A DNA stretch of 62,599 nt, filler included, from Hausera hauseri (taxonomy: Eukaryota): NCBI GenBank assembly GCA_046269625.1. It is 13 parts of 13 records of this genome, joined end to end, with 100 filler letters (N's around TTAATTAATTAA, not from the genome) between each part and the next. Parts side by side here need not be neighbours in the genome. Positions count along the whole stretch, not along the records: positions 44,263 to 48,379 come from JBJURY010750431.1; 12 more parts are not named here. One strand, 5' to 3'. Positions within the stretch are counted from its first letter, which is position 1. The number at the start of each line of letters is the position of its first letter. The translations under genes were made by a program, and so were the position numbers. This document shows, in pieces, positions 3,590 through 48,479 of this stretch. The notes beneath the pieces are model-generated. The model did no database searches. It was given only the letters and a program-made list of their open reading frames with translations, and was not told where the DNA came from.

Positions 3590-3763
3590 GTTCACAGGTT
3601 TTGCTTTAACAGCCTTTTACCGTAAAAATTTTGAGTAGGATAGGAATTGTGAAATTTCGAAGCGGAGAATCGGGCCCAATTGTGGGCCAGACGCGGCGGC
3701 AACTGACGCCCGGCCGTGCCTAACCAAATGGGCCAAAGGGCACCGTCCGCTGTAGGCACTACA
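3590..3763 (-). repeat. Structured ~175-bp element terminus, copy 1 (starts TGTAGTGCC on minus)
   Basis: Clearly alignable to 47916-48092; GC-rich multi-hairpin with compensatory changes. Confidence 0.85.
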
Positions 3764-43340: not shown

Positions 43341-45816
43341 ACCATGTGTATCATTTTTCTTATATATATTGTAACTCAATAAGTTACATGTTTTACTATA
43401 TTATGGGAACCATTATACTCCCTAAACAACGAATATTCCATAAATATTCTATGTTTCATTTCAATAATTTATTTGCTATTTTTTGGCATTAACAAACGTC
43501 TGATGATAGCCTACATTTATTTGATCTGTACTCTTCAGTCGTACTATTTACTTTGTTTATGCTCTTCTTCACTAGATTTCTAACAACAAACATTTGTCAC
43601 AAACACCTTTTGATAAATTACACGTTTAAACTGGTCAAACAAGTAGGCTGAGCAACCTGTAAATTAAATAGAAAGGATCATTTTCATTTGCGGACATAGA
43701 ACAATGATCAAAGACTTTATCAACAAAATGCTGCCATGAAGTGAGCGCTTTGTCTAGTTTTTGCTGATAAAAAATTAAAAAAGCATTTGCCATAACGTGA
43801 CACAGCAACAATGTAAGGCACAGAACATGTTCTTTTTGAAATATTCTTGAGCACTAATGCTTTTTGACTTGTTTGAGGAGGAGGATGCGCTCTAGTTTTC
43901 AGAACGATGAGAGATTTGTGAGGCTTGAACAGCTGGAATAGATGGTGCAGCTGATTTGCTCTCCTGTTTATCAGCTGAGGACAAGCCTTGCTCTTATTGC
44001 CTGCTGATGGTAGGAAGGGCTCCTCTCAGCATGCATCAGATGTGATTCATTAAGTACCGTCCTTCAAGTTTTGAGAAATAAAAATCATCTGATGCAAGAA
44101 GAGGAGCACAAGTGACCCATGAAACTCAAGCATGACACATGTATGGGTTGTATCAGGCCTACNNNNNNNNNNNNNNNNNNNNNNNNNNNNNNNNNNNNNN
44201 NNNNNNTTAATTAATTAANNNNNNNNNNNNNNNNNNNNNNNNNNNNNNNNNNNNNNNNNNNNTGCAAACAAGTCTGTTTCTGCGAATTCCAAAAATTTTA
44301 AAATTCTAATTAATTGTGTTTGAAGACGATGAAGGCGAACTGGAAGGACAAAATGAGGGAAATTTCTTGGAGATGGTCCAATCGTGAGAGAATATATGTC
44401 ACCAGAAATATAAAACGAGTTCATTGTATCGTTAGGAGATAGAGATAGAAATAAAATTATATATCAAGTGAAACAAGCCCAATATTTTTCGATTATCTTC
44501 GACAGCACACTTGACATTTGAAGAATGGATCAAACTTCTCAAGTTTTACGTTATGTTGTCATGGACATTGACAAAGTACAAGTTCAGGCGTCCTTCATCA
44601 ACTTCATTGACACCAAGGATAAGCACACCACTGAAATAGCTGAAATGATTTTGGAAAAGCTACGTTCGGACGGTTTAGACGTAATGAACTGCAGAGGTCA
44701 AGGCTATGACAATGCTTCAGTCATGAAGGGTCAACACTCCGACGTTCAAAATCACATTCTTGAAGTCAACCCCAAAGCGCAGTTCATCGCCTGCTCTAAT
44801 TATTTACTGAATTTGGTTGGTATTCGAGCTGCCAAAGCGGAGGTTAATTCCGTGACATTTTTTGGTACACTGGACTGTTTATACACTTTTTTCTCAGATT
44901 CAACACACCGATGGTAGTCCTTATAAAAGCAACCGGAATTGGCCCGAAGCTCTTGGTTGATACTCGTTGGAGCACCAGAGGACAAACCGTTAAGATAGTC
45001 AAGAATCAATTTTCAAAAATTAAAGATACCCTGGAGACGCTGATAGGCACTGGCAAAAATCCTATGACTAAATCTGAAGCAGTGGGATTATTATTAGCTA
45101 TACAGTCCTTCACGTTTCTCATCTATCTTGGGTTTTGGGCACCGGTTTTAATCGAAGTGAACTATGCACAAACTTACCTTCAAAAACAAGAATTGTCTAT
45201 TCGAGACTGTGCACTTAAGCTGAAAGCTTTAATGACGCTCTTAACTAGCAGCCGGGGTGACATCACTGAAGGCACTATAACATTTGCCGAAAGCATGTGC
45301 TCAGAGTTGGGGATTAGTACAAAACCCGAAAGACGCCTTCGACGCAAGAAGATGATGCCTGGCGAAATATGCGTAGATACTGGATTAGCGTACAAGAACG
45401 AACTAAGTAGGAGCATTTATTCTTCCTTGGAGCGGTTTGTTCAGGTGATAACAACTAGATTTGAGCAGCTTTATGATGTGGCAGATAAATACGATTTTTG
45501 TCGCCTTCGCAACTTTTGGACCCAGAGATTCAGATAAATCTTGACTATGCTCCTTACGACATTAACAAGGACGAATTTTGACTGGAGAGAAAGCGGATTC
45601 AACGGTTTGTCGGAGTTTCGGAAGAAGCCTCTGACCTTTCGAAGCAAGGACCTGTCGAACTCTTAAGTTTCATCAGAAAGTATCGACTGAATGATTCAGT
45701 GCCAAACATCATAATCTTAATTCGCATCTTTCTGACAACTTCAGTAAGTGTAGCAACATGTGAGCGAAGTTTTTCGACGCTCAAATTGATAAAAAGCTAT
45801 TTGCGATCAACGATGA

Positions 45817-46905
45817 TCAACTTCTGACTCTCTTATTGTTCCTTCTAATTCGATAAGCCGAATCCAGAGATGACCTTATTCTTCCAAACGTTACATTTGT
45901 ATATCCATTTCGATCGTCAGTAGATTTTATGTTGCAGATTTTGTCTAAAAGCTGGGAAATTATATCATGAAGCATTAAGGTTTTGTCTCCGGGAAGTTTC
46001 GTACAAATCTTGATGATTTTTTTAACGTAGACATTTATACTATAGTTCAAATGGAACATACTCAATGACATCGTATTTTTTAACTCAATAAGTTCCTTTT
46101 GCATCTGAAACTAGAAAGAGTCAAATTCCGATTCATCATTTCTGATTGCGTCTTTCAATTTAAAATTTCTGGTTTCCATTAAGTCTCGATCTTCATTTAA
46201 CTTATCTACATCACCTTTGATTTGGACGACATTTTTCTGAATTTCTAAATTTCTGTTAAACCCAGATTTAGATGTTTCTCGTTCGAGAATATTACGTTGC
46301 TTAAGATTCTTTTCAACTTTCGATTTGATAGAATCAAATTTAGCATTTTGTGATACCATTTCAGTACTTTCTATCAGTGGGTATCGTACCTGAAGTTCGT
46401 GGTACAATCCGTCTACCTCATTACAATCGTATTTAAGCTGTACCAATTCTTCCTTGAAAGAGTCGATTTGCGTGCGCACCTCGATATGTCGATATAGTGC
46501 GTATTCATGGTCCTCTCGGTCTTTCATGATAGTTTCCGAATCTGATTGTAAACTTTCTGCGAGTTTAACACTTGAATCAGATTTTTCGTTAACAGCTGTC
46601 ATATTTGAGTAAATTCCCCTCGCTGTAGCAACCGTGGCTGATGTAGTAAAACTTGTACCAGGTATATTTGGATAGAGAGTACTAGGAACAATGTTAGAAT
46701 TAGAAACTGGTATCCTCCTCAGAAAATCCAAAAAACAAATAACCATTGTTCGTGGTGATAATACAGTCGGAGTCACCAGCTGTGAACGAATTACCGCTCC
46801 TGGATATTGCACTGCACTAAGTAAATTTGGTACTTTTACTTTAGGAGCTAAATTTCTCATAATCCTTGTAAAGTAATCTTGTACAGATGTAAAAAAATAT
46901 TTCAA
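45817..46905 (-). pseudogene. Captured coiled-coil protein gene fragment
   Basis: ORFs 46111-46905 and 45817-46104, heptad-rich, inside the hAT-splitting insert. Confidence 0.5.
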
Positions 46906-47314
46906 ACAAATTCTTTTAAAAAAATAATTTAAAATTTAAATTGGCAGGATATTTTTGTATTATTTAAACAACTCTTTTCTACAAGTTTCCGATTATAGAC
47001 TTCAAAAATCATACAACGCAATGAAAGATGAACATAGAAAAATCAAAACAAGAATCTATACATTTTACAACTTAGGCAAACTTTAACAACCGTCAAGCCG
47101 TGCGTTATTTACAATCAACTACTGCTGACGCATACATAAATAAATAATGACAACGTAATGCCAGCATTTACAACATGAAGTATCAAAATTATACCCATCC
47201 AAAGAGGTATTACATCCGACAAAATAATATTAGCAGCCGAAAGAACCAAAATAAGTAAATCCAGTTTACCAAAAATGCACGATACTATAATATTTTCAAT
47301 GTTTTATTTAAAAT

Positions 47315-47503
47315 TTAAATGGCTTCTGTTGAGTTGGCAAAACTCCGAACCGCTTGTGCATTGATACGTTGTTCGGAGTATTTATCTTCAGGTGAATATT
47401 TAGCCGGATGGGCACAAATTGTTGGTTTCATTGATTGATCAAATGCTTTTAACGTATAAACTCGTTTGCCATTTTCACCCAAATAATAGCGCAGATTAAA
47501 CAT
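47315..47503 (-). pseudogene. NOP10: H/ACA snoRNP subunit NOP10 copy, intronless, frameshifted near C-terminus
   Basis: [20 protein letters not shown]...[19 protein letters not shown] is the NOP10 signature. Confidence 0.9.
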
Positions 47504-47529
47504 TTTCCAAATTCACAATATGGTGGCGA

Positions 47530-47649
47530 TGGAAAGATGAATATCCATTCTTGAATTAAACAATTCTTTAAACTACTGAACTGTTGCATTGTTTGAAACT
47601 GAAAATTCATGTGTTGGCCATCCAGAGTCTTTACTTTCACGTCAAACAT
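47530..47649 (-). pseudogene. Truncated ubiquitin-like N-terminal fragment (BAG6-like)
   Basis: MFDVKVKTLDGQ...; after a frameshift ..ATVQ*FKE.. Confidence 0.55.
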
Positions 47650-47915
47650 AATTTGCTATTGATGAATTCAACAAATAAGTTAATTTTGTTGTTCAGTTCA
47701 CGGAGCGATGTAGAGATTTTCGCACCTTTCGATACAAATGACTCAGTTTCGCTGAGAGTAATTGTTTTAGACAACTGGTGACTTTCCATTGCCGCAATCT
47801 CTGATTGAGTCAACGGCTTCGGGTGAATGACTTCGTTTTTTCAGTTTGTTTATCCGTCTGAAAAATCGTACGTCTGCTTAGTAGAATATTTCGATCTGTT
47901 TGGGTCGTGGTCTAA

Positions 47916-48092
47916 GTTCACAGGTTTTTTGCTTTAAAAGCCTTTTACCGTGAAATTTTTTGAGTAGGATAGGAATTGTGAAATTTCGATGCGGAGAATC
48001 GGGCCCGACTGTGGACCCAATGCGGCGGCGACGGACGCCCGGCCGCGCCCGACCAAATGGGCCAAAGGGCACCAGCCGCTGCGGGCACCACA
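47916..48092 (-). repeat. Structured ~175-bp element terminus, copy 2 (starts TGTGGTGCC on minus)
   Basis: Alignable with 3590-3763; forms the exact right boundary of the insert in the hAT gene. Confidence 0.88.
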
Positions 48093-48479
48093 TCTCTAAT
48101 GTTGCAATTCTGTCCACTGAAAAAGAGCTGGGGCAGAAAACTGACTTCGACATTATCATTGACTATTTTGCCAGAAAGAAAGCTAGTAAAATTGAATCGT
48201 AATCACTTTTAATGTTATCTCCTTCGTTACGCAACAAATGATTTTATGGAAACAAACTTGAGTTTCTTTGTTTTGTTTCGTTTTTTGGAGGGTATCAAAA
48301 GCATCTCCGCACAGGACTGCATATACCCTAGCTATGCAACTGTAGGTAACATAATGATTTTAATTTTTCAATTGACAAANNNNNNNNNNNNNNNNNNNNN
48401 NNNNNNNNNNNNNNNNNNNNNNNTTAATTAATTAANNNNNNNNNNNNNNNNNNNNNNNNNNNNNNNNNNNNNNNNNNNN

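What the first reader, a model, noticed from the sequence alone, without database searches (positions are those of the whole stretch)
45817..48092. One-ended gene-capturing element: structured TGT terminus followed by a co-oriented mosaic of cellular gene fragments
Seen: the hAT transposase stops at ...YLRSTM (about 45815) and resumes as (L)SNVAILS at 48093, so 2.28 kb was inserted with only about 4 codons lost. On the minus strand the insert starts precisely with a ~175-bp structured terminus. It is followed by an exon-like ORF, a truncated BAG6-like UBL, an intronless NOP10 with an AT-rich tail, a hydrophobic TM-like fragment and a coiled-coil gene fragment, all in the same sense. The far end has no TIR, LTR, poly(A) or Helitron CTRR end, only a short GATCAAC duplication. 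The same terminus at 3590-3763 heads different cargo (unknown ORF plus tubulin-like) and interrupts a Gypsy gag. Known: Helitrons start TC and end in hairpin-CTRR; Pack-type elements have two TIRs; LTR/Ginger integrases give TG ends. Inference: a possibly undescribed non-autonomous cargo-capture system, either RT template-jumping across mRNAs or one-ended read-through transposition.
Basis: partly seen in the sequence, partly recalled or inferred. Interest (0 to 1): 0.85.

Follow-up and report, generated by a model that had tools for sequence, protein, structure and literature searches.

The report
Retroposed gene mosaic with structured RNA head
A 2.26-kb piece of foreign DNA sits inside a dead hAT transposase gene; it starts with a tightly folded RNA-like head, carries a broken NOP10 gene copy and an orphan coiled-coil gene, and is flanked by a short target duplication, so it is most likely an ordinary-type RNA-mediated insertion, not yet shown to be a new kind of element.

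Summary
The insertion is real, but two parts of the description are wrong. The LS codons recur right of the insert, which gives a target-site duplication (TCTCT exact, or 7 of 8 for TCTCTAAT). The GATCAAC repeat is hAT coding sequence, not a junction feature.

The terminus is confirmed and better defined. On the minus strand, 48094-47912 is a 183-nt module. Its first 108 nt are 71% GC, against 34% for the rest of the insert. It comprises a 107-nt four-way junction, a 33-nt unpaired linker and a 38-nt 3' hairpin (z = -3.44, 0 of 200 shuffles). It matches no Rfam family, no tRNA, and has no TIR or LTR partner.

Of the "cargo", only two items are supported. One is NOP10 (Pfam 3.6e-16; complete, uninterrupted CDS, one frameshift). 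The other is one long orphan ORF (274 + 92 codons, one TAG) that stays open to the insert's last base. The UBL is weak, and the "exon-like" and "TM-like" ORFs are chance-level.

My best reading (about 0.4) is a retroposed transcript or cDNA made by target-primed reverse transcription and primed internally without poly(A). No other copy could be reached, so the family-level claims are untested. An HDV-like ribozyme fold is possible but weak.

The parts
44390..45833 (+). Left part of the decayed hAT transposase gene (DUF4371 tail plus hAT dimerisation region). It has 2 frameshifts (about 44917 and 45537) and several in-frame stops. It ends ...YLRSTM INF * LS.
   Evidence: Pfam; frame map; codons.
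45829..45836 (.). Left copy of the target-site duplication: TCTCT (45829-33) exact, or TCTCTTAT as an 8-bp reading with one mismatch.
   Evidence: It is the hAT L-S codons that recur at 48092-48097.
45834..48092 (-). The insert: 2259 bp under the 5-bp TSD reading. The alternatives are 45837-48092 under the 8-bp reading, or up to 48094 if the GA belongs to the RNA head. Its sense strand is the window's minus strand.
45835..46860 (-). Orphan ORF from ATG 46860: 249 codons, TAG at 46111-46113, then 92 more codons in the same frame, open to the insert's last base. Predicted as about 73 disordered residues followed by long helices (coiled coil).
   Evidence: AlphaFold single-sequence models. No homologue found.
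46906..47307 (-). AT-rich spacer (down to 21% GC) between NOP10 and the long ORF. It has T-runs but no A-run longer than 7 on the sense strand. It includes the chance-level 44-aa 'TM-like' ORF.
47308..47503 (-). NOP10 copy, complete from Met1, with an uninterrupted CDS. One frameshift near 47353-47360. The C-terminal [15 protein letters not shown] is in the neighbouring frame. AATAAA overlaps the stop at 47308.
   Evidence: Pfam Nop10p 3.6e-16; PDB NOP10 chains 5.5e-15 to 5.5e-12; frames.
47504..47544 (-). 41-nt leader directly upstream of the NOP10 ATG. It is a presumed 5' UTR, abutting the UBL-like codons.
   Evidence: inference.
47545..47649 (-). 35 codons resembling the start of a ubiquitin-like domain (MFDVKVKTLDGQ...). 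The support is weak.
   Evidence: Rad60-SLD E = 0.18; no PDB hit at E <= 10.
47650..47911 (-). Unassigned stretch containing the 58-aa 'exon-like' ORF. It has no family hit and its length is at chance level.
47912..48094 (-). Structured RNA-like head. It has a 7-bp closing stem (48094-88 with 47994-88) enclosing three hairpins, which form a four-way junction (48094-47988). A 33-nt unpaired AU-rich linker follows (47987-47955), then a 38-nt 3' hairpin (47954-47917). The first 108 nt are 71% GC with CpG o/e 1.09.
   Evidence: No Rfam hit at E <= 10; no tRNA.
48093..48100 (.). Right copy of the target-site duplication (TCTCT, or TCTCTAAT).
48092..48202 (+). Right part of the hAT transposase gene: (I)SNVAILSTEKELGQKTDFDIIIDYFARKKASKIES, then stop.

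Best explanation
The insert is a retroposed (RNA-derived) sequence placed into a dead hAT copy by a non-LTR-type reverse transcriptase through target-primed reverse transcription.

Shown: the hAT coding sequence is intact across the site, with 5-8 bp duplicated. That means a staggered cut, not a deletion or a blunt break. The two insert ends are completely unlike each other, so a cut-and-paste transposase with two similar ends is unlikely.

Inferred: the plus strand was nicked at CTCT^AAT. Its 3' end paired with an AGAGAG stretch inside a transcript (microhomology, no poly(A)). cDNA synthesis then ran to the 5' end of an RNA that begins with the 183-nt structured head. That is why the head end is exact, while the other end falls in the middle of an open reading frame.

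The RNA either was one read-through transcript that started at the head (like a 3' transduction) or was pieced together by template jumps (like the U6-L1 or WEIRD-MGL chimeras). One copy cannot separate these two. The head itself is an unidentified structured RNA: a small-RNA-like unit or the leader of a retroelement.
For: TSD and no codon loss. The 5 of 6 identity at the one offset fixed by the hAT frame has a chance of about 0.005 by my own calculation. No TIR or direct terminal repeat was found, and the ends are 71% against about 35% GC. The head has a strand-specific, well-defined fold (MFE frequency 0.55; z = -2.54 for the junction and -3.44 for the whole module) and starts at the junction. 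NOP10 is complete from Met1 with a 41-nt leader, an uninterrupted CDS and AATAAA at its stop. The 342-codon ORF is also uninterrupted and is cut by the junction. The nick site is pyrimidine run / AA, resembling the L1-type endonuclease preference (my knowledge of the family, not a tool result). Precedent: LINE reverse transcriptases fuse a non-coding RNA of unknown function to other transcripts, flanked by direct repeats (PMC2104539); U6 chimeras are a second case (PMC4476161).
Against: There is no poly(A), no recognisable LINE 3' tail and no structure at the far end. The piece contains no RT or endonuclease ORF. Intron loss cannot be shown because the parental genes are unreachable, and an intron-poor host would make 'uninterrupted' uninformative. 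NOP10, the spacer and the ORF look like a gene, an intergenic region and the next gene, so they could be one contiguous DNA segment. The TSD is short and is not significant if the boundaries are left free (P = 0.24-0.5); its weight rests on the hAT frame argument and on my recollection of the family motif STM-xxx-RLS-xLAxLS. Only one copy was seen.
Confidence: 0.4

Rival explanations
1. The structured head is an HDV-like self-cleaving ribozyme, as found at the 5' ends of R2, RTE, Baggins and L1Tc elements. It would cut itself out of a longer co-transcript 5' of G48094. The exact 5' end would then be made by RNA cleavage, and the element would be a ribozyme-headed, non-autonomous non-LTR retroposon.
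For: My strict descriptor finds a fold with cleavage 5' of G48094. It has P1 of 6 bp with a G.U first pair, a P3 of GCG/CGC, an 8-nt L3 starting UCC as in HDV, and a P1.1 of CC/GG. Among 1000 dinucleotide shuffles, 19 gave any hit and 7 gave a hit at the boundary. Long structured J1/2 inserts and missing P4 are documented in real HDV-like ribozymes (PMC4908430, PMC3774820).
Against: I wrote the descriptor after seeing the fold. A looser descriptor gives 12 competing solutions in this GC-rich block. P2 is only 4 bp, whereas R2 ribozymes have at least 5 (PMC3774820). The nested four-way-junction fold is far more stable and uses the same 5' strand. Rfam's HDV-like families gave nothing at E <= 10.
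Confidence: 0.12
2. DNA-level capture by a one-ended or rolling-circle type element (Helitron-like read-through). The head would be the only required end, and downstream host DNA would be carried along to an arbitrary stop.
For: One defined end and one arbitrary end. Gene pieces are co-oriented. NOP10, the spacer and the ORF look like contiguous genomic DNA. Helitrons can bypass their 3' terminator and capture flanking DNA (PMC4778049).
Against: A target duplication is present, and Helitrons make none. There is no 5'-TC at the head. The only A|TC...CTAA|T reading (45817-48099) would need a prior 19-nt loss and a frame shift of hAT exactly at the site, whereas the TSD reading restores hAT perfectly. 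There is no Rep/helicase ORF.
Confidence: 0.1
3. LTR-retroelement-derived chimeric cDNA, integrated by an integrase. The head would be an LTR or R-U5 leader starting with TG, and host mRNA pieces would be joined by template switching inside a virus-like particle (LTR-mediated retroposition).
For: The head starts with TGTGG. A 5-bp TSD is typical of integrases. An ACCACG about 185 nt in (47910-47905) mirrors the TGTGGT start. LTR-mediated retroposition of host mRNAs is documented in animals (PMC5131818).
Against: There is no second LTR or any direct repeat of the head. No tRNA-type primer-binding site follows the head. With the 5-bp TSD the far end is ...AATA, not CA. The far end becomes CA only with an 8-bp TSD, which integrases do not make.
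Confidence: 0.1
4. Not a mobile element. A 2.26-kb segment copied from elsewhere (DNA, or cDNA as filler) was patched into a staggered chromosome break during repair. The GC-rich block would simply be whatever lay at the end of the donor segment, for example a small-RNA gene next to NOP10.
For: The content looks like a small gene-dense stretch. There are no element hallmarks at the far end. Imperfect similarity between the insert's far end and the target extends beyond the TSD (about 11 of 14 positions with one gap, by eye from the sequences).
Against: Break repair usually gives small deletions or shared microhomology, not a clean duplication with zero loss. The exact coincidence of the junction with the first base of a closed RNA fold would be accidental.
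Confidence: 0.15

Closest known systems
LINE-made chimeric retrocopies (U6-L1 and U6-mRNA chimeras in mammals; WEIRD-MGL and WEIRD-Mg-SINE-MGL in Magnaporthe; PMC2104539, PMC4476161)
   Same: The 5' part is a complete structured non-coding RNA fused head-to-tail, in the same sense, to copies of other transcripts. The whole is flanked by short direct repeats. The same head can lead different 3' partners.
   Different: Known chimeras end in a LINE 3' part or an mRNA 3' end with poly(A). Here the 3' end lies inside an ORF with no poly(A). Here the downstream pieces keep their 5' ends (ATG plus leader), whereas known chimeras keep their 3' ends. The head matches no known RNA family.
3' transduction by L1 and SVA retroposons
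   Same: A defined element 5' part is followed by variable, co-linear downstream host sequence. The result is one fixed end and variable cargo, with a TSD.
   Different: Transductions end at a downstream poly(A) site and carry a poly(A) tail. The transducing element is a full LINE or SVA, not a 183-nt head.
HDV-like ribozyme-headed non-LTR retrotransposons and their short derivatives (R2, RTE, L1Tc/NARTc; PMC3774820, PMC3185411, PMC4035085)
   Same: A GC-rich structured RNA at the exact 5' end of the inserted copy, with a 5' junction that may involve microhomology with the target.
   Different: The double-pseudoknot fold here is incomplete (4-bp P2) and statistically weak. No RT ORF or element-specific 3' UTR follows it.
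Helitrons and Pack-type TIR elements (PMC4778049, PMC8277862)
   Same: Mosaics of host gene fragments inside a non-autonomous element, often in one orientation.
   Different: Helitron features are absent: no TC...CTRR ends and no A^T target, and a TSD is present. Pack-element features are absent: no TIRs. The NOP10 copy is a full, uninterrupted CDS, not an exon-intron fragment.
LTR-mediated retroposition (PMC5131818)
   Same: Host mRNA copies are joined to retroelement leader sequence. The copy starts with TG and a 5-bp TSD is possible.
   Different: There is no LTR pair, no primer-binding site and no CA at the far end.

Membership tests
Helitron | 5'-TC start, 3' hairpin plus CTRR end, insertion between host A and T without target duplication | tested here: not met
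   The head starts TGTGG (or GATGTGG). The only A|TC...CTAA|T reading needs a 19-nt loss and a frame shift of hAT. A 5-8 bp duplication is present.
Helitron | Rep/helicase ORF in autonomous copies of the family | not testable with these tools
   No other copy or source genome could be reached.
Pack-type TIR DNA transposon (Pack-MULE, Pack-hAT) | Terminal inverted repeats at both ends | tested here: not met
   No inverted repeat joins the two ends. One end is 71% GC and the other about 35%. Only TGT...ACA (3 nt) is shared, and only under the 8-bp TSD reading.
Pack-type TIR DNA transposon (Pack-MULE, Pack-hAT) | Fixed-length TSD (8 bp for hAT, 8-11 bp for Mutator) | tested here: inconclusive
   A 7 of 8 match (TCTCTTAT / TCTCTAAT) is possible, but a 5-bp exact TSD fits equally well.
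LTR retrotransposon, solo LTR, or LTR-mediated retrocopy | Two LTRs (or one complete LTR) with TG...CA ends, a 4-6 bp TSD, and a primer-binding site after the 5' LTR | tested here: not met
   There is no direct repeat of the head. With a 5-bp TSD the far end is AATA. No TGG-type primer-binding site follows the head.
LINE-made chimeric retrocopy (U6 or WEIRD type) | Flanking target-site duplication | tested here: met
   TCTCT is duplicated at the offset fixed by the hAT reading frame, with no target loss. It is not significant with free boundaries.
LINE-made chimeric retrocopy (U6 or WEIRD type) | 3' end with poly(A) or a LINE 3' tail | tested here: not met
   No A-run longer than 7 on the sense strand. 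The far end is ORF sequence with no significant fold.
LINE-made chimeric retrocopy (U6 or WEIRD type) | 5' part is a full-length copy of an abundant cellular RNA | tested here: inconclusive
   The head is a discrete, strongly folded 183-nt unit.
LINE-made chimeric retrocopy (U6 or WEIRD type) | Cargo lacks the introns of the parental genes, and the parents are unlinked | not testable with these tools
The protein searches found no same-species proteins.
HDV-like self-cleaving ribozyme | Nested double pseudoknot: P1 starting at the cleavage site, P3 adjacent to P1', P1.1 between L3 and J1/4, P2 of at least 5 bp, and a catalytic C in J4/2 | tested here: inconclusive
   P1, P3, L3 and P1.1 fit and place cleavage at G48094 (19 of 1000 shuffles gave any hit). 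However, P2 is 4 bp, the descriptor is post hoc, many alternative solutions exist, and Rfam gives no hit.
SINE | Pol III head (tRNA-, 5S- or 7SL-derived) with an A-rich or LINE-derived tail and its own TSD | tested here: not met
   ARAGORN found no tRNA and Rfam gave no hits. By my reading of the sequence, no TSD brackets the 183-nt unit alone.
NOP10 (H/ACA RNP subunit 3) | Match to Pfam Nop10p above the curated cut-off | tested here: met
   59.4 bits against a cut-off of 27.2, E = 3.6e-16. Human, yeast and other solved NOP10 chains match at 5.5e-15 to 5.5e-12. The copy is frameshifted after residue 48-49.
hAT transposase (host of the insertion) | hAT C-terminal dimerisation domain | tested here: met
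   Dimer_Tnp_hAT 33.5 bits against a cut-off of 21.4. DUF4371 scored 20.9 bits, below its cut-off of 32.1.

The most novel reading that the evidence does not exclude
The 183-nt head defines an undescribed family of retroposons whose only fixed part is a structured 5' leader RNA: a self-cleaving ribozyme or an snRNA-like unit of four-way junction, single-stranded linker and 3' hairpin. The family would repeatedly carry variable host transcripts or read-through sequence behind that leader, as a 5'-anchored gene-transducing system with internal, poly(A)-independent priming.
Probability: 0.12. Interest if true: 0.75.

Novelty: new member of a known kind. Interest (0 to 1): 0.4.

Why it matters
If the head proves to be a recurrent leader that drags different host genes into new places, it would be a fresh route of RNA-based gene duplication and exon shuffling in this organism. 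It would also mark a new structured RNA, possibly a ribozyme, tied to mobility. As it stands, the locus is one well-delimited example of a chimeric or read-through retrocopy inside a dead transposon. Its main use is as a corrected annotation: a TSD is present, no target is lost, and only two cargo genes are real. It is also a concrete, cheap target for a genome-wide BLAST and a self-cleavage assay.

Tried and rejected
**Reaching other copies or the source genome (all failed)**
- Ten exact window ORFs are not in the protein collection.
- Exact scans with pieces of the head found nothing in metagenome, viral or prokaryote-genome contigs.
- hAT pieces found no related loci.

**Homology searches for the cargo**
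- The long ORF had no hit in the word-indexed search, the full HMMER scan of 1.84 billion representatives, the ESM Atlas or PDB.
- NOP10 and the hAT 208-aa piece found nothing in the word-indexed search.
- AlphaFold single-sequence models gave only helices at pLDDT about 65. I did not send them to a fold search.

**Element classes considered and rejected**
- Helitron in either orientation.
- A two-TIR element.
- A solo or paired LTR.
- A SINE with its own TSD.
- A NOP10 processed pseudogene inserted separately: there is no poly(A) and no convincing TSD around it.
- hAT abortive gap repair with filler DNA: no hAT sequence is missing.
- A tRNA-like head.
- 5S, 7SL, U-snRNA, hammerhead or twister RNAs.
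- A structured LINE-like 3' tail at the far end.

I did not hand the joined hAT protein (left piece plus right piece) to any tool, because it has no single reference and reads through a stop. That step was left out.
Full report
**Scope.** I worked only on the piece 44263-48379.

**The host sequence.**
- The plus strand carries a decayed hAT transposase gene. Pfam gives Dimer_Tnp_hAT at 3.7e-08, above the curated cut-off, and a sub-threshold DUF4371 tail.
- The frame map shows two frameshifts, near 44917 and 45537, and several in-frame stops.
- The last conserved block before the insert reads ...CERSFSTLKLIKSYLRSTM.
- After the insert the frame resumes as (I)SNVAILSTEKELGQKTDFDIIIDYFARKKASKIES, then stop.

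**The junctions: the main correction.**
- In fact the hAT frame simply continues: ATC AAC TTC TGA CTC TCT, which is I N F * L S (45816-45833).
- From my knowledge of this transposase family, the motif is STM-xxx-RLS-xLAxLS. INF-*-LS therefore supplies exactly the four 'missing' codons plus L-S, with the stop in the position of the conserved Arg (CGA to TGA).
- Right of the insert the sequence restarts at ATC TCT AAT GTT. The (L/I)-S codons are therefore present twice.
- This is a target-site duplication. TCTCT is exact at 45829-33 and 48093-97. Read as 8 bp, TCTCTTAT matches TCTCTAAT at 7 of 8 positions.
- With completely free boundaries such a repeat is not significant (P = 0.24-0.5). Its weight comes from occurring at the single offset fixed by the hAT frame, where 5 of 6 identity has a chance of about 0.005 (my calculation).
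- Consequences: the target was cut with a stagger, nothing was deleted, and the insert is 45834-48092 (2259 bp).
- Under the 8-bp reading the insert is 45837-48092, which gives TGT...ACA ends.
- Beyond the TSD the insert's far end still resembles the target (TATTGTT against TAATGTT; about 11 of 14 positions with one gap, by eye from the sequences). This could be chance or a trace of annealing.

**The head.**
- On the minus strand the insert begins with a block of 71% GC, against 34% for the rest of the insert. Its CpG observed/expected ratio is 1.09.
- Folded as RNA, 48094-47985 forms a seven-base-pair closing stem around three hairpins, that is, a four-way junction. The MFE structure makes up 55% of the ensemble, z = -2.54, and 1 of 200 shuffles folds as well.
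- The complementary strand gives z = -0.57, so the fold is strand-specific.
- The closing stem uses the two bases (GA, 48094-93) that I otherwise count as TSD, so the 5' boundary is uncertain by 2 nt.
- A 33-nt unpaired AU-rich linker follows, then a 38-nt hairpin (47954-47917, z = -2.65).
- The whole 183-nt module has z = -3.44, with 0 of 200 shuffles as stable.
The 'terminus' is therefore a discrete RNA-like unit with the layout of an Sm-class snRNA: a 5' multi-helix domain, a single-stranded stretch and a 3' hairpin.
- It matches none of Rfam's 4227 families, even at E <= 10 on 151 nt. ARAGORN finds no tRNA.
- No inverted or direct repeat links it to the other end.

**Is the head an HDV-like ribozyme?**
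- Such ribozymes sit at the exact 5' ends of many non-LTR retrotransposons. They have few conserved bases, and they tolerate long structured J1/2 inserts and missing P4 (PMC3774820, PMC4908430, PMC4870747).
- A hand fold, followed by a strict descriptor, places cleavage 5' of G48094. The elements are P1 GAUGUG/CGCAUU with a G.U first pair, P3 GCG/CGC, L3 UCCGUCGC, and P1.1 CC/GG.
- Among 1000 shuffles, 19 give any such hit and 7 give one at the boundary.
- Against it:
  - I wrote the descriptor after seeing the fold.
  - P2 is only 4 bp.
  - A looser descriptor gives 12 rival solutions.
  - The nested fold is much more stable.
  - Rfam is silent.
- I keep this as a 0.12 side hypothesis that a self-cleavage assay would settle.
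- One oddity: CCGCAU occurs twice (48025 and 47994), and both copies are complementary to the 5' end. Two alternative pairings of the first seven bases are therefore possible.

**The cargo.**
- NOP10 is solid: Pfam Nop10p at 3.6e-16 and solved NOP10 chains at 5.5e-15 to 5.5e-12.
- It is complete from Met1, has a 41-nt leader and an uninterrupted CDS, and carries one frameshift near 47353-47360. After that point the true C-terminus ([15 protein letters not shown]) continues in the next frame. AATAAA overlaps its stop.
- The 264-aa and 95-aa ORFs share one frame and are separated by a single TAG. From ATG 46860 the frame has 249 + 92 codons and stays open to the last base of the insert.
- A 274-codon stop-free run never occurred in 500 shuffles, where the maximum was 139.
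- AlphaFold single-sequence models show a disordered N-terminus followed by long helices.
- The ORF has no detectable homologue: not among 1.84 billion representative proteins, nor. 'Cellular gene fragment' is therefore an assumption.
- The UBL claim rests on 35 codons, with Rad60-SLD E = 0.18 and no PDB hit.
- The 58-aa and 44-aa ORFs are chance-level. The median longest run in shuffles is 72 codons, and the plus strand has runs of 72, 69 and 66.
- The AT-rich stretch after NOP10 is T-rich on the sense strand, with no A-run above 7. There is no poly(A) remnant anywhere.
- The supported picture is therefore: head, about 270 nt unassigned, a possible UBL start, NOP10, a 400-nt AT-rich spacer, and a truncated orphan ORF.
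- Two real genes on one strand is weak evidence for 'all co-oriented'.

**Mechanism.**
- A clean short duplication with zero loss points to a staggered enzymatic cut.
- Cut-and-paste transposases need similar ends, and these ends share at most TGT/ACA.
- Helitrons make no TSD. The only TC...CTAA reading would require a 19-nt hAT loss and a frame shift exactly at the site.
- LTR or integrase models fail on four counts: a missing second LTR, a missing primer-binding site, the far end reading AATA under a 5-bp TSD, and the far end becoming CA only with an un-integrase-like 8-bp TSD.
- hAT gap repair with filler DNA would delete hAT sequence, and none is missing.
- What remains best is target-primed reverse transcription.
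  - The plus strand is nicked at CTCT^AAT. This pyrimidine run / AA pattern is reminiscent of L1-type endonuclease sites (my knowledge).
  - The 3' end pairs with AGAGAG inside an RNA.
  - cDNA is made up to the RNA's 5' end.
- This explains the exact head end, the arbitrary far end inside an ORF, the single sense strand and the TSD.
- Its weak points are the absent poly(A) or LINE tail and the lack of proof of intron loss.
- I cannot decide between two origins of the RNA. It may have been one read-through transcript from a head-bearing locus (3'-transduction-like), or it may have been stitched by template jumps, as in the WEIRD-MGL and U6 chimeras (PMC2104539, PMC4476161).
- The junction pattern is ambiguous:
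  - The pieces keep their 5' ends.
  - There is no poly(A) between NOP10 and the ORF.
  - NOP10, the spacer and the ORF look like neighbouring genes.
- These features lean slightly toward a contiguous donor.

**Limits.**
- The organism appears to be absent from the protein collections: NOP10 and the hAT pieces found nothing in the word-indexed search.
- Everything about a 'family' or 'system' is therefore untested.

**Verdict.**
- Novelty is most likely a new member of a known kind (a chimeric or read-through retrocopy with an unclassified structured RNA head).
- Interest is 0.4.
- There is a 0.12 chance of a genuinely new 5'-anchored transducing retroposon family, which would merit 0.75.

Noticed in passing
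window 48025-48020 and 47994-47989 (minus strand): The hexamer CCGCAU occurs twice in the head, and both copies are complementary to the first seven bases (GAUGUGG, 48094-48088). The 5' end therefore has two alternative pairing partners: one gives the four-way-junction closing stem, and the other gives the P1 of the HDV-like fold.
   Followed up: partly
window 45835-46860 (minus strand): A roughly 342-codon ORF (one internal TAG) with a disordered N-terminus and long predicted helices. It has no homologue at E <= 0.001 among 1.84 billion representative proteins, so it is an orphan gene or an element-encoded protein.
   Followed up: partly
window 45834-45842 versus 48098-48105: Beyond the TSD, the insert's far end (TATTGTTCC) still resembles the target that follows the right TSD copy (AATGTTGC). 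Together with the TSD this gives about 11 of 14 matches with one gap. It may be chance, or a trace of annealing between template and target.
   Followed up: partly
window 44515, 45579, 45825 (plus strand): Three of the four in-frame stops in the hAT frames that I checked are TGA. The one at 45825 sits where the family has a conserved Arg, consistent with CGA to TGA decay.
   Followed up: no
window 47303-47310 (minus strand): The only AATAAA on the insert's sense strand overlaps the NOP10 stop codon, yet no A-run follows within 100 nt. The NOP10 piece therefore does not look like a classic polyadenylated processed pseudogene.
   Followed up: partly
window 47985-48092: The GC block has a CpG observed/expected ratio of 1.09 inside a 34-39% GC context. 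There is no CpG depletion, although the surrounding repeat shows C-to-T type decay.
   Followed up: no
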